Virus record (IMG/VR): IMGVR_UViG_3300046804_003469
Location: 124,001-188,000 of that record
Strand: one strand, 5' to 3'
DNA length: 64,000 bases
Shown: positions 1 to 63,679 of the stretch, piece by piece
Position numbering within the stretch: the stretch's first letter is position 1
Layout of the letters: every line of letters begins with the position of its first letter
Translations under genes and position numbers: made by a program
The notes under the pieces: generated by a model
What the model was told of the DNA's origin: nothing
The model's database searches: none
The model's input: only the letters and a program-made list of their open reading frames with translations

Positions 1-3000
1 AATCATATCTATTTTCCAGGCCCCATGGATGGAAAACTTGAATTTTCTTATTACACATATGAAAATACTTTAGAATCTCAAATACTTGATTCTCAAAGAT
101 TAATTAGAAAAATATCTAATCCAGAACCTATTTCAAATCCAAAAGAAACCTATCCAGGAGCAACTGGAATTTTGGTTAATGGAGTTGAAATTTTAAATTA
201 TAAATCTAGAGATAGTATCTATTATGGATCAATAGAAGATATTGAAGTATTAAGATCAGGTGAAGGATTTAATGTTATAAATCCACCAGTGTTACAAATT
301 TCAGATTCCACAGGAACTGGTGCATCTGGACATTGCTGTGTAATTGGTTCATTGGATAGAATTGATATTGTTGATCCTGGTTTTGATTATTTGGATGAAC
401 CAAATATTGTAATCAAGGGTGGAAATGGTAAAAATGCAGAAGCTAAAGCCAGATTAATAGAATTTGAGCATATTGTATACTTTAATTCTCAACCAACTGC
501 GTTATGCGTAAACATATCTGATTCTTCCATAGTATTTCCAAAATATCATAAATTTAGAGATTTTGAATCTGTACTTTATAGATCATATGGTCAGCAAGAA
601 ATAACTGGATTAATTTCTGGATCAATATACTATGTTAAAGTTATAAACGAATATAAAGTACAGTTTTATTCTTCATTTGAAGATGCAGTTAATCAGGTTA
701 ATAAAATATCTTTAACTGGGCATGGGATTGGAAATCATAGTTTCCAGAGCACTAAAAATAAAAATAAAATAGGATCTATTGATATTATTGATCCTGGTTT
801 TGATTATGCTAATCAAAAAATTATTGTATCTTCGTCTGGAATTAATACTGCTTCTAATACTATATTATTCAAAAATCATGGTTATCAAAGTGGTGAAATA
901 GTAGTTTACAAACAGTCATCTGTAACTCCAATTTCAGGTTTAACCACACAAACTTCTTATTATGTAACTAAAGTTAATGATGATGAATTTAGACTATCAC
1001 GTATAAACAATCAAGCAGTAGGAATAAATTCTTCAAACTTAGAATTTTATTATACGACCAATCAATATGTAAATTTAACTTCAACTGGTGAAGGATTTCA
1101 TGAATTTAATTATGAACCAATTACTGTAGAAGTTATTGGAAATATTGGAGTTTCTTCTGTTTATAATCAAAATTTCAGTGCTATTCTTCAACCAATTTTT
1201 AAGGGAGGAATAAGCAAAGTATTTTTAGAAACTAATGGATCATCATACGGAAATGAAGAAATAATAAACTATGAAAAACAACCAACTTTATCTTTACTCA
1301 ATGGATCTGGTGCATTAGTAAGACCAGTAATTAACAATGGGTCTATAGTTGACATTTTAGTACAAAATCCTGGAATAAATTACAATTGTCCTCCAGATTT
1401 AGTAGTTAATGGTGATGGTTTTGGTGCTTTGTTAGTTCCTATAGTTGAAAATGGTTATTTAAAAAATATAAAAATAGTAGATGGTGGTTTTGGATATAAT
1501 GAAAGTAATACCACAATCAATGTTATCTCGACTGGTTATAATCAACAGTTAAAAGCAAACATTAAAAGTTGGAGAATTAATTTAGTTGAAAGAAGTATTC
1601 AAAATAATCAAATAACAGATGATGATGGATTTATTGATTCTGGTTTAAACGATAGTTATGGATTACAGTATACTCATGCTTACGCTGGAAGAAAATTCAG
1701 ATCTTCTACATTATCATCAAGATATGTTAATGGTGTTATTAGATATTATCCAGATTTACAAATGTCTGGAGGTATTGAAGTAGATTCTCCATCTCACTCT
1801 CCAATTATTGGTTGGGCATATGATGGAAATCCAATATATGGACCTTATGCATATTCATCCAAAGATGGAGGACCAATAAGATCATTAAAATCAAGTTATA
1901 TTTTACAAAACTCTTCAAATAGACCAAATATTTCTAATTATCCATTAGGAATATTTGTTGAAGACTATGTATATAATGCATCTGGTGATCTTGATGAATT
2001 TAACGGAAGATTTTGTAAAACACCAGAATTTCCTAATGGAGTTTATGCTTATTTTTGCACCATAGAGAATATTGTTCAATCTTTTGGACCTTTTAAAAAT
2101 TATAAAAAACCATCATTTCCATACATCATTGGAAACTACTATAAATCAAAACCAATTGATTTTAATTTCAACAAATCTTCAAATCAAAATGAAATTGATA
2201 TAAACAAAACTGGTTGGTTAAGAAATACTAGTGCTTATAATTTACTTCAAGAAAAAAGTGGTTATGATTATATTTTTAGACCTTATAAAATTAAAGAGCA
2301 ATTTTCAATTATTAACTCAGTATCTAGAGGAAAGGTAGATAGTATTGGCATTTTAACTGGGGGATATAATTATAAAGTTAAAGACAAAGTTATTTTTGAT
2401 AACACTAAAACAACAGGTACTGATGTATCTGCGGAAGTATCTTTAATAAAAGGTAAAAAGGTTAATTATGTAAGTACAGCATCATCTATTACCAACAATG
2501 TAGAACTTATTGCGGTTTCACCATCATCATTCGTAGGATTTACTACACTTCCACATGACTACAATAATAATGATATTGTATCATTTACTGGATTATATGA
2601 CTTTAAAAAATATGGGACAATCAAGATTTCAGAAAATCAATTATTCTTAAGAACTGGCGTTTCTTCAGTATTATATACTGGAATAGTTACTTATTTTGAT
2701 GTATTTGGATCTTTAGATTTTCCAAGAATTAGAGAAAATGACATTTATCAAATTGAAAACGAACAAGTAAAGATATTAAATATCGATCCATCATCATCAA
2801 GAATAAGAGTATTACGTAATCAAAATGGTACTGTTGGTGTTACATCATATAGTTCTGGATTTAGATGTTCCGAAATTACAAGAAAATTTGAAGTAAGTTT
2901 TGGTATTAGTTCTTCATATAGTTCTACACCAAACAAAGAAATATACTTTGATCCTTATGAATCTGTTGGTATAGGAACAAGCGTAGGTGTTGGAATCAAT

Positions 3001-6000
3001 TCTACAATTTATTTTTCAAATCCAGGAATTGGACCAAGATTTATAACAATTCCAACTAAAACAATATACTTACCAAATCATCAACTTAATACTGGATCTG
3101 AATTAATTTATTCATCTAATGGTGGAAGTCCAATATCAATTTCCACAGATGGTTATACTTCTACATCTTTACCTGATAATTCAGTAGTTTATGTAGCAAA
3201 AATAACTGATAATTTAATTGGCATATCCACAGTTTTGGTTGGGTTAGACACTACTGGTAATTTTTCTGGAATTGGAACAAATTCTTCAATAAGTACTCTA
3301 TATTTCACGAATAAGGGATCTGGAAATTATCATAGTTTTAAAACAAATTATCAAGATACACTAGTTGGAGATTTAAGTAGAAATACTGTAACTGTATTTA
3401 CAAAACAAAATCATAATTTACAATTAAATGATAATGTAATTATTGATATTTCATCTGGTATAACAACAGTGGTTAATGTTCAATATAATGATTATAATAG
3501 AAGATTAGTAGTTAATTCAAAAAACTTTAGTGAATCTGATGTAGATATATTGAAAAATACCATTAGAATTCCAAATCACAATTTCCAAGAAGGTCAAAAA
3601 GTAATCTATAAGTCTACAGCTTCAGGTATAGAGACAATATATTATGTTATTATTGTAGACTCTAATAGAATTAAACTTTCAAATAGTTATTATGAAGCAA
3701 CATTATCAAATCCAATAGAAGTTAATATTGGATTTGCTAAAACTTCTGGTTCATTATTACCTATTAATCCTCCAATTGAATTATATAAAAATAGTATAGT
3801 AAAATTTGATCTATCAGATTCTTCATTATCTTATAGTAAAAATTTCACTTCATATCCTGCTTTCCATTTCGATTTTTATAAGGATCCAGATTTTAAATAC
3901 AAATATGAAATTTCTGAAGGATCTTTATCTTATGAAGTGTATAGAATTGGAAAAATTGGTATTGATAGCACTGCCGCTGTTTATTTGACAATTACCGATA
4001 ACACTCCACAAAATTTATACTATAGATTAGAACCAATAGATCCAGTTAATAATTTACCAGAGAAATTAAGTATCATTGTAGATGATGATCAAGTAATTAA
4101 TCACAACAAATTATATTTTGTCGATAGTAAGTATAATGGAACTCATACAATAAGTGGAATTGGATCAACTTCATTTACATTTTCATTATTGGATACTCCA
4201 GAGAAAAATAGTTATTATCCATATGAAGGTGATTTAAATTATTACACAAATTCTTCAACTGCTTCTGGAGAAATATATGAATTAAAATTAACTTCTAAGG
4301 GTAGAAGTTATAACAATGTTCCAGATATAGTTGGTGTTGTTACAAATACTGGTAACTCTGCTATTCTCGAATGTCAAACTAACAGTATTGGTAAAATTCT
4401 TAATACTACAATTAAAGACATTGGATTTGATTATTCATCAGATTTATCTTTAAGACCATCTGCTAAACTACCTAGTTTAGTTAAATTGCAATCTTTATAT
4501 TCATTAGATTATATTGGTATTACTTCTTCTGGAAGAAATTATGTTACTCCTCCAGATTTACTTTTATTTGATGGTTATACTCAAAAAATAGTAACAGATG
4601 TTGATTTAAGATATGTCAAAAATAGAAATCGTGTAACAATTTTAAAGAATACTACTTCTCTTTATAATTCTATTCCAACAATTTTGCCAATTAATAATTC
4701 AAATGGAATAAAAATTAAATCAATCACTTACGAACCAACAACTGGAATTGCATCAGTAACTCTTGCCCCAAGTTACAGTGATAGAGATGTTTTTCCTTTT
4801 GAAGTTGGTGATAATGTTATGATTGAACATACTAGTGTAGGAATTGCTACTACTGGTAAAGGATATAATACTGAAGATTATAATTATCAGTTCTTCGAAA
4901 TTGTATCCATGGATCCAAATATTGGAGGAGCCAATGGAAGTGTAAGATTTAGTTTAAATGGATTATTGTCACCAGGAGAATATCCTGGAACATATGATTC
5001 TGATAATTCATTGGGTACAATTGTTCCCGAAAAATTCTTCCCAATATTTAAACCAGTATTAAAGAAAAATAATTTCTTTGTTGGTGAAACTGTAATTTCA
5101 AAATCATCCCAAACTACTGGTGTTGTTGATAGTTGGAATACTAATAGTAATTATCTTAAAGTATTAGAAGATAGAACAAAGTTTAATGTTGGTGAAACTA
5201 TTGTTGGAAAATCATCCAAAACGCAAGGAGTTATTTCAGATATAATAAGATTTGATGCTGTTTATGATGTTAATGGATCATCAATAGTCAGAAAAGGATG
5301 GAATCTTGATACTGGATTTTTAAATGAACATTCTCAAAGATTGCATGATAGTGATTATTATCAAAATTTCTCATATTCTTTAAAATCAAAAGTACCTTAT
5401 GATGTTTGGAACACATCCGTTTCTGTTCTCAATCATACCGCTGGATTTAAAAGATTTTCTGATTTAATTATAGAATCAGTTCCTATTCCAAAATCTAGCA
5501 ATATTGTTGGAATAGGAACTACAGTTAATGTTGGAGTTGGAACTGTACGAGATGATATTGTTGGAATGCAGACATCACAAAATAATGGAGACTTTAGTAG
5601 TAGAGTTGATATTATTGAATATGTTGATACAAATACAATTTATGATTTTGACCTAGTTAAGGAAAGAACTATTTCAAATAGATCAAATAATCTCGTTTTT
5701 AATTCTAGAGTTATACAGGATTATATTGAATCTGTAGGAAATAGAGTACTTATTCTTGATGATTTAAGTCCTAGTTTTAATAGCAATCCAAGACCTACAA
5801 TATTCACTCCAGTAGATCAATTTAATTTAAATTATTATAGATCTAAAAAATATTTTGCTTTAGTTCAGGATAGAGCAAATATTAATGGAAGACAGGCAAA
5901 CTTGGTAACATTAGTGCAAAATGGAAAATATGGATTTATAAGTCAATATGGTATTTTAAATACTATTTCTCAACTTGGATATTATGATTTTTCAATCTCT

Positions 6001-44419: not shown

Positions 44420-44689
44420 ATGTACATACTAACTATCAATGGTAAAGAAACAGAAGGTGCATATTCAGTAACTGATGAAGAGGGAGATAATATTCTTTAT
44501 ATCTTCCAAGAAGAGGATGATGCAGTTCGTTTTGCCATGATGTTAGAAGAAGATGGATTTCCAGAAATGCATGTAATTGAAGTAGAAGATCATATCATGA
44601 TGAAGACATGTGAAATCCAAAATTACAGATATAGTATAATTACTAAAGATGATATTGTGATACCCCCAGAAGACCATGATTTTATTTGA
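44420..44689 (+). CDS. Small acidic hypothetical protein
   Basis: EGAYSV...FQEEDDAVRFAMMLE...DDIVIPP. Abuts gp47 and overlaps gp46. Confidence 0.8.
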   Translation: MYILTINGKETEGAYSVTDEEGDNILYIFQEEDDAVRFAMMLEEDGFPEMHVIEVEDHIMMKTCEIQNYRYSIITKDDIVIPPEDHDFI

Positions 44690-46388
44690 AAAAATTCGTT
44701 GGAAAAACTTTTTAAGCACTGGAAATCAGTTTACGGAAGTCATTCTCAACAAGACAGATAACACTCTTATTATAGGATCAAATGGTGCTGGAAAGAGTAC
44801 AATTCTTGATGCATTGACTTTTTCACTTTTTGGAAAACCTTTTCGTAAAATTAATAAACCACAACTTATAAATTCTACGAATGAAAAGGATTGTTTAGTT
44901 GAGGTTGAATTATCTATTGGTTCTACTTCTTGGAAAGTTGTGCGTGGAATTAAACCAGCAATATTTGAAATTTATAGAAATGGTAAACTTTTAGATCAAT
45001 CTGCTGCTGCTTTAGACCAACAAAAATGGTTAGAGCAAACTGTATTAAAAATGAATTACAAATCTTTCACTCAGATTGTAATTCTTGGATCAAGTACATT
45101 TGTCCCCTTTATGCAACTTCCTGCTGCTCATAGGAGAGAAGTTATTGAAGATCTTTTGGATATTAAAATATTTTCTTCAATGACTTCAATTATTAAGGAT
45201 AAAATACGTCAAATTAAAGATGATATCAAAGTTTTGAATCTTAAAAAAGATTCTTTAAAAGATAAAGTTGATATGCAACAAAATTTTATTGAAGAATTGG
45301 AAAATCGTGGAAATGCCAAAATAAATGCCAATAAAGAAAAGATTGCAAATTTAGATCAAGAAGTTGGTGTTTATATGGTGGATAACTCTGCTATTGAAGA
45401 AGGAATTTATAAACTTCAAAAAGAACAAGAGGGAGTTATTAGTTCTGTAGAAAAAATAAAAAAACTTAATAATCTTAAAGGTAAAGTATCTCAAAAAGTA
45501 GTATCAGTAACAAGAGAGCATAAGTTTTTTAAAGAAAATACGGTATGCCCTACTTGTACTCAAACAATTGAAGAAGAATTTCGGTTAAATAAAGTTGCAG
45601 ATGCTCAAAATAAAGCAAAAGAACTCCAAAAAGGTTATCAAGAACTTGAGGAGACTATAAAAAATGAACAGGAAAGAGAGCGTCAATTTATTGAACTTTC
45701 CAAAGAAATTACAAAACTAAACCATGAGATTTCGCAGAATAATACTCGCATTTCCTTCAACCAAAGACAAATTCAAGATCTTGAATCTGAAATTCAAACT
45801 ATTACCGAACAGATTAAGAATAAAAATACTGAACATGAAAAATTAGAAGAATTTAAAAAAAATCTAACGGAAACTTTTTCTGAACTAGCAGAGAAAAAAG
45901 ACAAAATTAATTATTATGATTTTTCATATAGTTTACTTAAAGATGGTGGAGTAAAAACTAAAATCATCAAGAAGTATCTACCGCTGATAAATCAGCAAGT
46001 TAATCGTTATCTTCAAATGATGGATTTTTATATCAATTTTACTCTTGATGAAGAGTTTGATGAAACTATTCAATCTCCCATTCATGAAGATTTTTCTTAT
46101 GCTTCTTTTAGTGAGGGTGAAAAAATGAGAATTGATTTGTCTCTTTTGTTTACTTGGAGAGAAGTTGCCAGATATAAAAATTCAGTAAATACGAATCTTT
46201 TAATCCTTGATGAAGTATTTGATTCTTCTTTAGATGGATTTGGTACTGATGAATTTTTAAAAATTATTCGGTATGTTATAAAAGATGCTAATATCTTTGT
46301 TATTTCGCATAAAACGGGAATGGAAGATAAATTTAGAAGTGTAGTAAAATTTGAAAAAATTAAAGGTTTTAGTAGGATGGTTTCTTAA
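44676..46388 (+). CDS. gp46: Recombination ATPase gp46 (Rad50/SbcC-like)
   Basis: GSNGAGKS, CPTC zinc hook, FSEGEK signature, LILDEVFD. Confidence 0.97.
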   Translation: MILFEKIRWKNFLSTGNQFTEVILNKTDNTLIIGSNGAGKSTILDALTFSLFGKPFRKINKPQLINSTNEKDCLVEVELSIGSTSWKVVRGIKPAIFEIYRNGKLLDQSAAALDQQKWLEQTVLKMNYKSFTQIVILGSSTFVPFMQLPAAHRREVIEDLLDIKIFSSMTSIIKDKIRQIKDDIKVLNLKKDSLKDKVDMQQNFIEELENRGNAKINANKEKIANLDQEVGVYMVDNSAIEEGIYKLQKEQEGVISSVEKIKKLNNLKGKVSQKVVSVTREHKFFKENTVCPTCTQTIEEEFRLNKVADAQNKAKELQKGYQELEETIKNEQERERQFIELSKEITKLNHEISQNNTRISFNQRQIQDLESEIQTITEQIKNKNTEHEKLEEFKKNLTETFSELAEKKDKINYYDFSYSLLKDGGVKTKIIKKYLPLINQQVNRYLQMMDFYINFTLDEEFDETIQSPIHEDFSYASFSEGEKMRIDLSLLFTWREVARYKNSVNTNLLILDEVFDSSLDGFGTDEFLKIIRYVIKDANIFVISHKTGMEDKFRSVVKFEKIKGFSRMVS

Positions 46389-46432
46389 GTGGCACATGAA
46401 GAAGATTGGGCAGATCGTTTGGTAAATAGGAT
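46386..46432 (+). promoter_or_regulatory. Phage-type promoter: AAGTGGCACA box plus -10 TAGGAT
   Basis: 31-nt spacing from TGGCAC to the -10, identical to the copies at 46582 and 48812. Confidence 0.55.
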
Positions 46433-46464
46433 ATGGGACTTCATAGATAGGATCTGTTACCCTG

Positions 46465-46650
46465 ATGGCAAACCACAAGATCTGGGAAAGTGGTCGCAAT
46501 CCTCACAGGAGGAACGACAAGGGGAAAAAGAAACCCCAAGCACTCCGACAAGCAAAAGCACGACTGAACCACTTTAAAAAGTGTCACAAGACCTCCCCCA
46601 AAAAGGGAGGTTCTTCTTTATTGTACGTTCATACGATTCAAATCAAATGA
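46465..46650 (+). CDS. 61-aa highly basic protein with an internal terminator (ArfA/BrfA-like gene architecture)
   Basis: MANHKIWESGRNPHRRNDKGKKKPQALRQAKARLNHFKK... Own promoter upstream; ATGA overlap with the next gene. Confidence 0.6.
   Translation: MANHKIWESGRNPHRRNDKGKKKPQALRQAKARLNHFKKCHKTSPKKGGSSLLYVHTIQIK
46569..46624 (+). promoter_or_regulatory. Phage-type promoter: CCACTT-N3-AAAGTGTCACAAGA plus -10 TATTGT
   Basis: Near-identical box at 48799-48821, with the same 31-nt spacing. Confidence 0.7.
46591..46619 (+). terminator. Intrinsic terminator-like hairpin inside ORF 46465..46650
   Basis: ACCTCCC-CCAAAAA-GGGAGGT followed by TCTTCTTT. Confidence 0.6.
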
Positions 46651-48797
46651 CCGTCCGCCACGAAATCAAGTCTCAACTCGCCAAACTTCTTGCTACTGAA
46701 GACCTTGTGGTTGAGCACAAGAAAGTAGAGACCGCTTGCTTCAACGTCCATACTCGTGTGCTGACTCTTCCAATGTGGGAGAAGGCAAGCAACACCGTCT
46801 ATGACCTGCTGGTTGGTCACGAAGTTGGTCACGCTCTTTATACTCCAGATGAAGATTGGTTGAAAGAATATAAGATTCCACCTCAGTTTGTGAATGTGGT
46901 GGAGGATGCTCGTATTGAGAAACTGATGAAGCGTCGTTATGCTGGTCTGGCGAAGACTTTCTTCAACGGATACAAGGAACTTGCCGACGATGATTTCTTT
47001 CAAATCAAAGACGACAACCTGGAAACTTATAATCTTGCCGACCGTGCAAACCTGTGGTTCAAGATTGGTAATTATACTCAGGTGCCGATTGAGCATGGTG
47101 AAGAGACTGATATTATCAATCTGATTGCCGAAACTGAAACTTTTGCCGATGTGCTGATTGCCGCAGAGGCACTCTACAAGTATTGTAAGCACAAGCAAGA
47201 AGAAGAAACAAAGACTTCTCTGGATAATCTTGAGTCCCAACAGAGTGGTTCTAATCAACCTGCTTCTGACTTTAGTGATCAACAAGAAGGTGAAAACGAT
47301 CAACCAGAATCTGGTGCTAGTGATGGTTCTTCTTCTGATGAATCTACTCAACAACCTACTCAACAAACTCCCCAAGAAATGGGTGGTGAAAAGGATGAAG
47401 ATCCAGAAGTAAAGACGATGGATTCTCTGGAAGAGTCTCTAAAAGAACTTGTGAATAATAGCACTCCTGAAAATGTTTATTTGGAACTTCCTCAACTTGA
47501 CTTAAAAAAAGTCATTGTTCCAAATGATATTATTCATTCTAAGTGTGAACAAGAATGGGATAACTATATTCAAGTGCGAGAATGTACATATGATCAAATT
47601 TTTGGTGTAGTTGATAAGTCATTTATCGAGTTCAAGCGTTCTGCTCAGAAAGAAGTCAACTATCTGGTGAAAGAGTTTGAGTGTCGCAAGGCAGCAGATT
47701 CCTATGCCCGTGCATCAACTGCCCGTACTGGTGTTCTGGACTGCTCCAAACTTCATACCTACAAGTACAACGAAGACCTGTTTAAAAAAGTCACTACTTT
47801 TGCCGATGGTAAAAATCATGGTCTAGTGTTTGTTCTGGATTGGTCTGGATCTATGAATGAGGTGATGTTGGATACTGTCAAGCAACTCTTCAATCTTGTA
47901 TGGTTCTGTAAGAAAGTTGCAATTCCGTTTGAGGTTTATGCTTTCACTTCGGATTATCCTTTAGTATCTTACGATGAAAATGGTCGATCTAATTTGAGGC
48001 AACTTTCTTATAAAAAACGTGATGGTTTGATTCAAGTTGGGGAATGGTTTTCTATGATGAATCTGTTGACTAGTAATACTAATAATAAAGTTCTTGATCA
48101 ACAGATGAAAAATCTCTATCGTATTGCATATTCTTTTGGTAGAAATTGTTATACTTCTTATTCAATTCCAAATGGACTTTCTCTTTCTGGAACTCCTTTG
48201 AATGAAGCAATTATTTCTCTTCATCAAATTCTCCCTAAATTTCAGAAAGAAAACAAACTTCAAAAAGTTCAGTGTGTGGTTTTAACTGATGGTGAAGCAT
48301 GTGGTATCAAATATCATCGTGAAGTAAAACGTCATTGGGAGCAAGAACCTTTTCTTGGAACTTTTCATATTGGAAGGGATGCTATTCTTCGTGACCGCAA
48401 AACGGGAAATACTTATTCTTTGGATTGTGAATGGCATCAATTTACTGATATTCTTCTTCGCAATATTCGTGATCGTTTTGTCGATATTAACTTTATCGGT
48501 ATTCGTGTTCTCGAATCCCGTGATGCTGGTAGTTTTATTCGCCGTTATTGTGGATTTTATGGTGAAGAACATGATAAAGTGATGGGTGCTTGGCGTAAAG
48601 AAAAAGCATTTTCTATTAAAAAGTCTGGATACCATACTTACTTTGGTCTTTCTGCAACTGCTCTTTCTCAAGATACTGAATTTGAAGTTGCTGAATGTGC
48701 TACTAAATCTCAAATCAAATCTGCATTTGTAAAAAGTTTAAAATCGAAAAAAATGAACAAAAAAATTCTGGGTGAGTTTGTGGAACTGGTTGCCTGA
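46647..48797 (+). CDS. CobT-like protein: HExxH metallopeptidase-like domain, acidic linker, vWA domain
   Basis: GHEVGHALYT, NVVEDARIEK, MIDAS motif DWSGSM, SGTPL, LTDGE. Confidence 0.85.
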   Translation: MTVRHEIKSQLAKLLATEDLVVEHKKVETACFNVHTRVLTLPMWEKASNTVYDLLVGHEVGHALYTPDEDWLKEYKIPPQFVNVVEDARIEKLMKRRYAGLAKTFFNGYKELADDDFFQIKDDNLETYNLADRANLWFKIGNYTQVPIEHGEETDIINLIAETETFADVLIAAEALYKYCKHKQEEETKTSLDNLESQQSGSNQPASDFSDQQEGENDQPESGASDGSSSDESTQQPTQQTPQEMGGEKDEDPEVKTMDSLEESLKELVNNSTPENVYLELPQLDLKKVIVPNDIIHSKCEQEWDNYIQVRECTYDQIFGVVDKSFIEFKRSAQKEVNYLVKEFECRKAADSYARASTARTGVLDCSKLHTYKYNEDLFKKVTTFADGKNHGLVFVLDWSGSMNEVMLDTVKQLFNLVWFCKKVAIPFEVYAFTSDYPLVSYDENGRSNLRQLSYKKRDGLIQVGEWFSMMNLLTSNTNNKVLDQQMKNLYRIAYSFGRNCYTSYSIPNGLSLSGTPLNEAIISLHQILPKFQKENKLQKVQCVVLTDGEACGIKYHREVKRHWEQEPFLGTFHIGRDAILRDRKTGNTYSLDCEWHQFTDILLRNIRDRFVDINFIGIRVLESRDAGSFIRRYCGFYGEEHDKVMGAWRKEKAFSIKKSGYHTYFGLSATALSQDTEFEVAECATKSQIKSAFVKSLKSKKMNKKILGEFVELVA

Positions 48798-63077: not shown

Positions 63078-63488
63078 ATGGCACAAGTTATTGATACAAA
63101 CAAATATATTGAATTCGTTCGTCAAACTACGAGTCCTGCAAGCACTGACTATGCTTCTCTTTTGACTCGCTTAAATGAACTTGAAGTACAAGATACTGAT
63201 GTTCCTCGTCTTTTGACTGCTGCTCTTGGGATTAGTGCAGAAGCAGGAGAATTTACTGAGGTTGTGAAAAAGATTTTCCTTCAAGGCAAACCCTACAACG
63301 AAGAAAGTGTTTTTCATATGAAGCGTGAACTTGGTGATATTTGCTGGTATCTTTCACAAGCATTTATGGCACTTGATACTAATTTTGAAGAGATTCTTCA
63401 AATGAACTTTGAGAAACTGAGTGCTCGTTATCCTGAAGGTACATTTGATGTTTATCGTTCTGAAAATCGTGTGGAGGGAGACCTGTGA
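63078..63488 (+). CDS. mazG: MazG-like nucleotide pyrophosphohydrolase
   Basis: EAGEFTEVVKK, ELGDICWY, KLSARYP. Confidence 0.93.
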   Translation: MAQVIDTNKYIEFVRQTTSPASTDYASLLTRLNELEVQDTDVPRLLTAALGISAEAGEFTEVVKKIFLQGKPYNEESVFHMKRELGDICWYLSQAFMALDTNFEEILQMNFEKLSARYPEGTFDVYRSENRVEGDL

Positions 63489-63661
63489 GCAAAGAAAAAC
63501 AAGTAACGATTAAAATGAATGTGAATTCAGCAATTCGAGTTCTTGAAGTTCTTGATAATGCTACTGCTGGATATAGTAAAGAACATATTCCAGAAAGAAT
63601 TGTACTTCTACGTGAAGTTATTGAACAACTTGATAAAGAACTTGAAAAAGTAGTTCTCTGA
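63485..63661 (+). CDS. 58-aa hypothetical protein (GTG start, not in the ORF track)
   Basis: MSKEKQVTIKMNVNSAIRVLEVLDNATAGYSKEHIPERIVLLREVIEQLDKELEKVVL. GTGA overlap with mazG; GGAG SD upstream. Confidence 0.7.
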   Translation: MSKEKQVTIKMNVNSAIRVLEVLDNATAGYSKEHIPERIVLLREVIEQLDKELEKVVL

Positions 63662-63679
63662 CCCCGTGAGGGGTTTTTT
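63661..63679 (+). terminator. Intrinsic terminator
   Basis: ACCCC-GTGA-GGGGT followed by a T run. Confidence 0.8.

What the first reader, a model, noticed from the sequence alone, without database searches (positions are those of the whole stretch)
46386..46650. Candidate phage-encoded alternative ribosome-rescue factor made from a non-stop mRNA
Seen: a self-contained unit. A promoter (-10 at 46427-46432) precedes the ATG at 46465 and a very basic 61-aa ORF (RNPHRRNDKGKKKPQALRQAKARLNHFKK). A GC hairpin plus U-rich tract (46591-46619) lies about 10 codons before the stop. The C-terminal residues (TSPKKGGSSLL) are simply the translated terminator. Known: ArfA and BrfA are ~60-70-aa basic proteins whose mRNAs are truncated inside the ORF by a terminator or RNase III. 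They are therefore tmRNA-tagged and destroyed unless trans-translation is overloaded, when they recruit a release factor. Inference: a tmRNA-sensing rescue factor or ribosome-binding peptide for when host mRNA decay floods the cell with stalled ribosomes. I see no sequence similarity to ArfA or BrfA; the case rests on architecture. The hairpin also overlaps the cobT promoter and its U-tract is imperfect.
Basis: partly seen in the sequence, partly recalled or inferred. Interest (0 to 1): 0.85.

Follow-up and report, generated by a model that had tools for sequence, protein, structure and literature searches.

The report
Phage small basic gene ending inside terminator
A small, very basic protein gene that is widespread in T4-like cyanophages runs straight into a transcription terminator before reaching its stop codon, as the bacterial rescue-factor genes arfA and brfA do, but nothing yet shows that its product rescues ribosomes.

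Summary
The ORF (46465-46650, 61 aa, pI 11.2) and the hairpin plus T-tract (46590-46621) are real. The ORF belongs to a large, phage-only family (phrog_3309). The family has 215 GenBank cyanophage records and at least 1,591 metagenomic proteins, and no cellular relatives.

Codon-position variation shows strong protein-level selection on about 38 N-terminal residues. That selection stops exactly where the hairpin begins. The hairpin is conserved as a structure, with 82 different sequences and 3-6 pair types per stem position.

Among 196 distinct family loci, 159 have this hairpin with the in-frame stop 1-119 nt after it, and none has the stop before or inside it. Seven more ORFs read into a tRNA gene. 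Other terminators in the same phage DNA follow stop codons (30 of 33). The ArfA/BrfA-like non-stop architecture is therefore supported.

Several points are not supported:
- The unit is not self-contained. The gene is usually the last cistron after gp46 or gp32.
- There is no similarity to ArfA or BrfA, and no evidence of rescue activity.
- About 15% of members have ordinary stops or are fused to signal-peptide proteins.
- The hairpin doubles as a terminator-promoter cassette for the downstream cobT-like peptidase gene.

Incidental overlap and translation-sensed attenuation remain serious rivals.

The parts
44676..46388 (+). gp46 (SbcC-like recombination endonuclease subunit), the upstream gene. 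In most relatives the small basic ORF follows it directly.
   Evidence: Pfam SMC_N/AAA_23. GenBank relatives are annotated gp46. gp46 C-terminus found in 190 of the roughly 250 fetched loci.
46389..46577 (+). Alternative-frame ORF (GTG start, 62 aa). Its first ~30 codons (46389 to about 46480) encode an acidic peptide conserved only in the window's sub-clade. The remainder overlaps the basic ORF and is not conserved (L019 has a stop there).
   Evidence: tblastn hits in L011, L014, L019, L023 only. No PHROG or Pfam hit.
46465..46650 (+). Small basic ORF, 61 aa, a divergent member of the cyanophage family phrog_3309.
   Evidence: tblastn to S-SZBM1 (2e-7) and S-SKS1 (6e-7). Relatives hit phrog_3309 at 1e-12 to 1e-21. 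Alignments A1, A2, A6.
46465..46587 (+). Constrained core (residues 1-41 here, about 38 in the family consensus): a disordered basic N-terminus plus one helix (residues 25-40).
   Evidence: Codon-position entropy 0.585/0.373/1.242 in the core. AF2 helix 25-40 with block-mean pLDDT 83-91, rest low.
46590..46612 (+). G+C-rich hairpin (intrinsic-terminator stem-loop) inside the ORF, covering codons 42-50.
   Evidence: Same position in 159 of 196 loci with 82 distinct sequences. Covariation at every stem position. No codon periodicity, 0.93/1.03/1.11.
46613..46621 (+). T-rich tract. Predicted transcript 3' ends fall at about 46619-46621, inside codon 52-53 and 27-29 nt before the stop codon.
   Evidence: The 3'-end position is inferred from the usual 7-9 nt rule for intrinsic terminators and was not measured.
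46619..46624 (+). -10-like hexamer TATTGT. It aligns with the conserved TGTAT(A/G/T)AT that follows the hairpin upstream of the peptidase ATG in relatives.
   Evidence: Position-specific conservation upstream of 140 distinct peptidase starts. No transcription-start data.
46647..48797 (+). It has an HExxH motif and a vWA-type DxSGS motif. Its ATG overlaps the small ORF's TGA.
   Evidence: No Pfam hit at E<=0.01. The motifs were read directly from the translation.

Best explanation
This is a genuine protein-coding gene of a large family confined to T4-like cyanophages.

The functional part is a basic peptide of about 38 residues: a disordered Lys/Arg-rich N-terminus with a conserved Trp, a KPQALR motif, and one amphipathic helix. 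The gene is normally the last cistron of the gp46 (or gp32) transcription unit.

Immediately after the constrained core, with no stop codon in between, comes a structurally conserved G+C hairpin and T-tract. This element also forms the terminator half of a terminator-promoter cassette for the next gene. Transcripts that end at this terminator therefore lack an in-frame stop. Only read-through transcripts carry one, at a position that drifts freely.

By established bacterial biology, ribosomes reaching such a 3' end stall and are resolved by tmRNA-SmpB, which tags the peptide for degradation. I infer that peptide accumulation is coupled to terminator read-through and to the host's trans-translation capacity. 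This is the expression logic of arfA and brfA.

What the peptide does is not shown. My best guess is that it binds a polyanionic partner such as the ribosome or RNA.

Shown here: homology, coding constraint and where it ends, hairpin conservation and covariation, and the position of the stop relative to the hairpin.
Inferred: termination in vivo, non-stop translation, tmRNA tagging, and any ribosome role.
For: - Family size and restriction to phages: phrog_3309, 215 phage records, 1,591 proteins, 147 clusters at 50% identity with the core at the N-terminus. No true hit in 185,579 cellular genomes.
- Coding signal: entropy by codon position is 0.585/0.373/1.242 over the core but 0.93/1.03/1.11 over the hairpin.
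- Hairpin plus T tail at a fixed offset in 159 of 196 distinct loci, against 1.6% at random positions.
- 82 distinct hairpin sequences, two positional classes, and 3-6 canonical pair types at each stem position.
- The in-frame stop is always after the hairpin (159 of 159), at +1 to +119 nt, most often at +8 or +85. Only 12 loci have it within 5 nt.
- Seven further ORFs run 11-23 nt into tRNA-Leu or tRNA-Ile genes, so an RNase P cut would also remove the stop.
- Other terminators in the same ~800 kb of cyanophage DNA follow stop codons (30 canonical, 3 spanning). In the window itself, the three other strongest + strand candidates (39852, 56246, 63660) follow a stop codon; two weaker hairpin candidates (22715, 62323) lie within long ORFs.
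- ArfA and BrfA precedent: both are 72-codon genes with a stem-loop or terminator before the stop (PMC8012679).
Against: - No transcript 3' ends, tagging or protein data exist.
- 30 of 196 loci break the pattern: 12 stop 6-27 nt before a tRNA, 8 have ordinary stops (for example S-SM2), and 10 are fused in frame to a signal/TM-like segment plus a domain. The peptide therefore works without non-stop gating in some phages.
- Depletion of in-frame stops inside the hairpin is not significant (0-1 in-frame against 10 out-of-frame events, p about 0.08).
- In 12 loci the stop lies within 5 nt of the stem and could be included in terminated RNA.
- In E. coli, translation close to or over a terminator represses it (PMC4824070), so the terminated non-stop isoform may be minor.
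- The U-tracts are imperfect (4-6 T in 9 nt).
- The hairpin in the window alone is only z = -1.96.
Confidence: 0.4

Rival explanations
1. The overlap is incidental. The peptide only needs its ~38-residue core and tolerates any C-terminal extension. Genome compaction has pushed the neighbouring terminator-promoter cassette (or a tRNA) right up against the core, so the first in-frame stop simply falls wherever A+T-rich sequence provides one. The peptide is made mainly from read-through or not-yet-terminated polycistronic RNA, and the non-stop isoform has no regulatory meaning.
For: - C-termini are extremely varied: hairpin-coded, tRNA-coded, 2-8 random residues, or a signal peptide plus domain.
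- Many stops occur at the first A+T-rich opportunity, 5-11 nt after the stem in about 50 loci.
- Later stops sit in the conserved peptidase leader or in an alternative frame of the peptidase N-terminus.
- The same hairpin-TGTATAAT cassette precedes the peptidase even when the small ORF is elsewhere.
- Selection against in-frame stops within the hairpin is not demonstrable.
Against: - Other genes in the same phage DNA keep their stop ahead of the terminator (30 of 33).
- None of the 159 hairpin-bearing loci has acquired a stop before or within the hairpin, despite repeated hairpin turnover and two positional classes.
- Routinely making a non-stop last cistron would be costly if it were merely tolerated.
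Confidence: 0.33
2. The ORF acts as a translation-sensing attenuator of the pyrBI-leader type. Because it spans the terminator, a ribosome following RNA polymerase closely prevents hairpin formation and lets transcription continue into the downstream gene. When translation lags, the terminator forms. The conserved peptide would then be a second, separate function.
For: - The ORF spans the terminator in 159 of 159 hairpin loci.
- It is often translationally coupled to the long upstream gene through ATGA or short gaps.
- In E. coli, terminators near or within the distal part of a translated region are repressed by ribosomes (PMC4824070).
- In the window and about 13 relatives the stop overlaps the peptidase ATG.
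Against: - The downstream gene appears to have its own -10-like element after the hairpin.
- Downstream genes differ between phages: peptidase, HNH endonuclease, a 226-aa ORF, or tRNAs.
- Leader peptides are not normally under strong amino-acid selection, whereas this one is.
- The degree of transcription-translation coupling in picocyanobacteria is unknown.
Confidence: 0.15
3. The real gene is the alternative-frame ORF 46389-46577, which ends 12 nt before the hairpin in the canonical gene-stop-terminator order. Under this reading the basic ORF is spurious.
For: That ORF starts directly after the gp46 stop. Its first ~30 residues are conserved at the protein level in L011, L014, L019 and L023.
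Against: - The acidic ORF exists only in the window's small sub-clade.
- Its distal part is not conserved (L019 has a stop there).
- It has no family hits.
- The basic frame shows strong codon periodicity across 78 sequences and hundreds of homologues.
- Both ORFs may be real, but the acidic one does not replace the basic one.
Confidence: 0.04
4. The region is a non-coding RNA gene or a purely regulatory element: a conserved ~110-nt sequence ending in a terminator, as in bacterial sRNAs.
For: The layout of a conserved segment followed by an intrinsic terminator resembles sRNA genes.
Against: - Third-position variability is 2-3 times that of positions 1 and 2.
- An ATG start is present in 161 of 186 loci.
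- In-frame fusions to longer proteins exist.
- No Rfam match.
Confidence: 0.02

Closest known systems
ArfA (E. coli alternative ribosome-rescue factor A) and its non-stop arfA mRNA
   Same: Both are small basic proteins of about 50-70 codons. A stem-loop lies inside the ORF ahead of the stop, so the mature mRNA lacks a stop. The residues beyond the truncation point are dispensable (PMC8012679).
   Different: There is no sequence similarity. The phage gene is usually a distal cistron rather than a monocistronic gene. About 15% of family members have normal stops or are fusions. No constrained KGKGS-type motif is present. tmRNA regulation, RF2 recruitment and rescue are all untested.
BrfA (B. 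subtilis YqkK)
   Same: A rho-independent terminator lies inside the ORF before the stop codon. This is the same kind of element as here, not an RNase III site (PMC8012679).
   Different: No homology was detected. The phage family is absent from cellular genomes, and its function is unknown.
pyrL leader of the pyrBI attenuator (my own knowledge), and the ribosome repression of nearby terminators measured in E. coli (PMC4824070)
   Same: A short ORF is translated across an intrinsic terminator, so translation can suppress termination.
   Different: Here the peptide is under strong purifying selection, and the downstream gene varies and seems to have its own promoter.
PeSL composite terminator/promoter cassettes of T4-type phages (PMC2839356, PMC4122927)
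   Same: A stem-loop is immediately followed by a sigma-70-like -10 element at gene boundaries of T4-like genomes. The small gene also occupies different genomic contexts in different phages.
   Different: PeSLs were described in non-cyano T4-like phages as intergenic elements. Here the stem-loop lies inside an ORF, and no -35 element or transcription-start data are available.
phrog_3309 / 'T4-like GC 587, 729, 1213' hypothetical proteins
   Same: This is the family the window ORF belongs to.
   Different: These are only annotated as hypothetical, or mis-annotated as gp5 or as cAMP phosphodiesterase. The searches run here found no description of the in-ORF terminator.

Membership tests
ArfA family (Pfam ArfA) | Sequence homology to ArfA | tested here: not met
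   No ArfA hit for the window ORF or 28 relatives at E<=10 in Pfam or NCBIfam. A profile search against all PDB chains returned only two chance matches, E 3.4 and 5.
ArfA family (Pfam ArfA) | Hairpin or terminator inside the ORF upstream of the stop, giving a non-stop mRNA | tested here: met
   At the sequence level only: (159 of 196 loci, stop always after the hairpin). In vivo truncation was not tested.
ArfA family (Pfam ArfA) | Conserved basic C-terminal motif (KGKGS-type, from my own knowledge) that occupies the mRNA channel | tested here: not met
   The window's PKKGGS is encoded by the hairpin. The equivalent residues vary freely (for example KRRGS, KGDLS, NGAVS, HGDAS) and show no codon periodicity.
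ArfA family (Pfam ArfA) | Product tagged by tmRNA; recruits RF2 to non-stop ribosomes; synthetic lethality rescue | not testable with these tools
   Requires experiments.
BrfA (YqkK) | Sequence homology to BrfA | tested here: not met
BrfA (YqkK) | Rho-independent terminator before the stop codon | tested here: met
   BrfA description in PMC8012679.
phrog_3309 (cyanophage small basic protein) | Homology to family members | tested here: met
   The window ORF matches the S-SZBM1 and S-SKS1 ORFs by tblastn against 2.3 Gb (2e-7, 6e-7). S-SKS1, S-SM2 and S-SRM01 members hit phrog_3309 at 7.5e-14 to 1.3e-21. The window ORF itself is too divergent at its N-terminus to hit the PHROG HMM at E<=1.
Intrinsic (rho-independent) terminator | G+C-rich stem-loop followed by a U-rich tract, conserved as a structure | tested here: met
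   U-tracts are imperfect (4-6 of 9).
Intrinsic (rho-independent) terminator | Actual transcript 3' ends at the U-tract | not testable with these tools
   No 3'-end data could be found.
pyrBI-type translation-coupled attenuator | Leader ORF spans the terminator | tested here: met
pyrBI-type translation-coupled attenuator | The leader peptide sequence is itself unimportant; one dedicated downstream operon | tested here: not met
   Strong amino-acid constraint. Downstream genes vary.
PeSL terminator-promoter cassette | Stem-loop immediately followed by an early sigma-70-type promoter | tested here: inconclusive
   A conserved TGTAT(A/G/T)AT follows the T-tract about 22-29 nt before the peptidase ATG in 140 loci. 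No -35 element and no TSS data.

The most novel reading that the evidence does not exclude
T4-like cyanophages encode their own tmRNA-gated, non-stop-mRNA-encoded ribosome-binding peptide, unrelated in sequence to ArfA, BrfA or ArfT. It accumulates only when host trans-translation is saturated during infection. It then either rescues stalled ribosomes by recruiting a release factor or otherwise modulates ribosome or tmRNA function to keep phage translation running.
Probability: 0.1. Interest if true: 0.9.

Novelty: new variant of a known kind. Interest (0 to 1): 0.62.

Why it matters
Genes whose mature mRNA lacks a stop codon by design are very rare. arfA and brfA are the textbook cases, and both report on the state of ribosome rescue.

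This gene would be the first viral family with that architecture if it holds up. The family is abundant in ocean metagenomes and present in most sequenced T4-like cyanophages.

That would give a direct experimental handle on how cyanophages deal with stalled ribosomes and trans-translation in Prochlorococcus and Synechococcus, which are globally important primary producers.

If the overlap instead proves incidental or attenuator-like, the result is still useful in three ways:
- It defines a conserved 38-residue peptide.
- It fixes several mis-annotations.
- It describes a conserved terminator-promoter cassette upstream of the cobT-like peptidase gene.

Tried and rejected
- RNAalifold on a MAFFT alignment of 53 hairpin regions gave no structure, because loops of different length were misaligned. 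I replaced it with counting pair types anchored on the ORF frame.
- The test for depletion of in-frame stop trinucleotides inside the hairpin looked strong when part of the coding core was included. Restricted to the hairpin it shrank to 0-1 against 10 events, p about 0.08. I treat it as inconclusive.
- I considered that the window's unusual N-terminus (KIWESGRNPHRRNDKGKK against PNWQHHSKKEQKRKLK) was a frameshifted copy. An ungapped nucleotide comparison shows in-frame divergence instead.
- I considered a Tat-signal reading of the RRxxLK motif, because some members are fused to signal-peptide-like segments. RR is not conserved in the window's clade, so this is unsupported.
- A lambda-N-like role, with an arginine-rich peptide binding its own hairpin, is unlikely. 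The peptide is conserved while the hairpin loops vary freely.
- Rfam gave nothing.
- I did not run a fold search, because the AF2 model is a single helix with mean pLDDT 65.
- The only genome-contig hit (L253, a MAG labelled Bdellovibrio) is a false positive within a 258-aa unrelated ORF.
- Literature searches for cyanophage ribosome rescue, cyanophage tmRNA, cyanophage terminators/TSS and the locus tags found nothing relevant.
Full report
**What is in the window**

The window comes from a T4-like cyanophage that is not in the phage collection. The best DNA match is Synechococcus phage S-SKS1, at about 81% identity over the flanking genes, with the intergenic part unmatched.

The gene order is as follows:
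- gp46 (SbcC-like) at 44676-46388.
- A 258-nt gap.
- A 716-aa gene starting at ATG 46647. GenBank relatives call it 'peptidase'.

Inside the gap, the ORF 46465-46650 encodes 61 residues with pI 11.2. The terminator scan reports one site there: a stem at 46590-46612 (8 pairs, 5 G-C, loop of 7) followed by CTTCTTTATT. The TGA of the ORF overlaps the ATG of the next gene. Folded alone, the hairpin is only modestly better than shuffles (z = -1.96), so the case rests on comparison with relatives.

**The ORF is a real gene of a large phage-only family**

- S-SKS1, S-SRM01, S-SM2, S-SZBM1, P-HM2 and P-RSM6 all carry a homologous ORF just after gp46.
- Three of these hit phrog_3309, a 42-position family of unknown function, at 8e-12 to 1e-21.
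- tblastn with the S-SM2 member finds 215 phage records, all cyanophages or marine viruses, with one copy each.
- A profile search of 5.8 billion proteins finds 1,591 members of 48-101 aa.
- An exhaustive HMM search of 1.84 billion representatives finds 147 clusters of 33-212 aa, with the match almost always at residues 1-37.
- A scan of 185,579 bacterial and archaeal genomes finds only one candidate, and it is a false positive.
- There is no Pfam, NCBIfam, PDB-sequence or Rfam match.

Across 78 non-redundant members, the mean entropy at codon positions 1, 2 and 3 is 0.585, 0.373 and 1.242 over the first ~38 codons. This is the signature of purifying selection on a protein. The window belongs to a sub-clade with a diverged but in-frame N-terminus.

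AlphaFold2 with 29 sequences predicts only one confident helix, residues 25-40. Everything else is disordered.

**Constraint stops at a conserved hairpin, and the stop codon comes later**

Over the hairpin-encoded codons the three-position periodicity disappears (0.93/1.03/1.11).

I collected 240 IMG/VR loci in three scans. One scan was ranked on the core only and one was seeded from the most different members, to avoid selecting for the tail. Together with the GenBank loci, this gives 196 distinct true family loci. Their architecture is:

| Class | Loci |
|---|---|
| G+C hairpin (dG <= -9) with T-rich tail right after the core, in-frame stop after the hairpin | 159 |
| Same hairpin, stop before or inside it | 0 |
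| ORF runs 11-23 nt into a tRNA-Leu or tRNA-Ile gene | 7 |
| ORF stops 6-27 nt before a tRNA | 12 |
| Short ORF with an ordinary stop | 8 |
| Fused in frame to a signal-peptide/TM-like segment plus a domain | 10 |

- The same hairpin criteria are met at only 24 of 1500 random positions in the same DNA.
- There are 82 different hairpin sequences in two positional classes. One starts 45 nt after the KPQA lysine codon, and its 5' arm encodes the conserved KKRL. The other starts at +59 nt.
- Each of eight stem positions shows 3-6 different canonical pair types.
- The first in-frame stop lies 1 to 119 nt beyond the stem. Peaks fall at +8 (26 loci), +35 (13 loci, the window's ATGA arrangement) and +85 (34 loci, where the ORF runs on in an alternative frame of the peptidase N-terminus). 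Only 12 loci have it within 5 nt.
- For the seven ORFs that read into a tRNA, RNase P processing would likewise remove the stop.
- In one fused member the added domain is a Gly-zipper 2TM domain.

**Is this just how these phages place terminators?**

No. In the window, the three other strongest + strand candidates (39852, 56246, 63660) all follow a stop codon, with gaps of 20, 6 and -2 nt; two weaker hairpin candidates (22715, 62323) lie within long ORFs.

A direct test for selection against in-frame stops inside the hairpin is inconclusive (0-1 in-frame against 10 out-of-frame events).

- The ORF starts within -5 to +18 nt of the upstream long ORF's stop in about 100 of 186 loci, often as an ATGA overlap. 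It is therefore typically the last cistron of the gp46 or gp32 unit, not a self-contained unit.
- The proposed -10 at 46427-46432 (TAGGAT) was not picked up by the scan.
- That site lies inside a second, acidic small ORF that begins right after gp46. This ORF is conserved only in the window's sub-clade.
- Upstream of 140 distinct peptidase starts there is always a hairpin, a T-tract and a TGTAT(A/G/T)AT element about 22-29 nt before the ATG. This holds even in phages where the small ORF is not adjacent.
- The hairpin is therefore also the terminator half of a terminator-promoter cassette. This is reminiscent of the PeSL cassettes of other T4-type phages (PMC4122927).

**Mechanism**

The following is established:
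- arfA and brfA are 72-codon genes with, respectively, a stem-loop (premature termination or RNase III cleavage) and a rho-independent terminator before the stop.
- Their products are made from non-stop mRNA and are repressed by trans-translation (PMC8012679).

By the same logic, transcripts ending at 46619-46621 would yield a peptide of about 52 residues on a stalled ribosome, subject to tmRNA tagging. Read-through transcripts would give the 61-residue form.

I rank the readings as follows:

| Reading | Confidence |
|---|---|
| Non-stop architecture that gates peptide accumulation | 0.40 |
| Incidental overlap with an unconstrained C-terminus | 0.33 |
| Translation-sensed attenuation of the downstream gene, consistent with ribosome repression of nearby terminators in E. 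coli (PMC4824070) | 0.15 |

An actual ribosome-rescue function has no direct support. The family is not homologous to ArfA or BrfA. The KKGGS-like string is a by-product of the hairpin sequence. Members with normal stops, or with membrane-targeted fusions, argue against an obligatory rescue-factor design. I put the rescue-factor reading at about 0.1.

**Novelty**

The literature searches I ran found no description of this family's in-ORF terminator. It is best filed as a new variant of a known kind: the ArfA/BrfA-type non-stop gene architecture in an unrelated, virus-only small-protein family. Its function remains to be determined.

Noticed in passing
window 46389-46480 (ORF listed as 46389-46577): A second small ORF starts with GTG directly after the gp46 stop. 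Its first ~30 residues are acidic and amphipathic (EEDWADRLVNRIWDFIDRICYP) and are conserved at the protein level, but only in the window's sub-clade (L011, L014, L019, L023). It overlaps the start of the basic ORF in another frame.
   Followed up: partly
L088 (S-RIM8) 1201-1710; L092 (S-B64) 1201-1548; L173-L182; P0158, P0162, P0164, P0195: In some phages the 37-residue core is fused in frame to a signal-peptide-like segment (for example LLAASVVLVGINPANA/ES) and a His-rich or glycine-zipper domain. This fused gene lies after gp32. The core carries a KRRxxLK string there that loosely resembles a Tat motif. S-RIM8 records annotate this protein as 'cAMP phosphodiesterase'.
   Followed up: partly
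L089 (P-RSM4) 1201-1332; L186, L187, L193, L232, L244, L247; also L185, L189, L195-L197 and others: In another set of phages the small ORF sits at the head of the phage tRNA array (tRNA-Ile(tat), Met, Leu(taa) and so on). In 7 loci its last codons and its stop lie inside the first tRNA gene.
   Followed up: partly
window 46590-46646, and 70 nt upstream of the peptidase ATG in 140 loci: A conserved hairpin, T-tract and TGTAT(A/G/T)AT cassette lies at a fixed distance before the cobT-like peptidase gene. It is also present when another gene intervenes (L002, L192, L214, L217, L218). It is probably a terminator-promoter module.
   Followed up: partly
L003 (S-SM2) 1902-2039; L001 (S-SKS1) 1890-3926: Annotation problems. 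The S-SM2 family member is annotated 'gp5 baseplate hub + tail lysozyme'. The family ORF is unannotated in S-SKS1, S-SRM01, S-SZBM1, P-RSM6, S-RSM4 and P-SSM2. The S-SKS1 RefSeq record has no feature over the peptidase gene.
   Followed up: no
window 46647-48797: The downstream 716-aa protein has an HExxH motif (VGHEVGHAL) and a vWA/MIDAS-like DWSGSM motif, but gives no Pfam hit at E<=0.01.
   Followed up: no
window 63485-63675: A 58-aa ORF ends exactly at the start of a clean terminator (63660-63675, followed by TTTTCATAA). This is a canonical stop-then-terminator arrangement that contrasts with the finding.
   Followed up: no
L002 (S-SRM01) 1945-1990 and the +45 class (L190-L227): In the class where the hairpin starts 45 nt after the KPQA lysine codon, the T-tract runs into TATAAATA. 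This matches the T4-type late-promoter consensus (my own knowledge), just before the ORF's stop.
   Followed up: no
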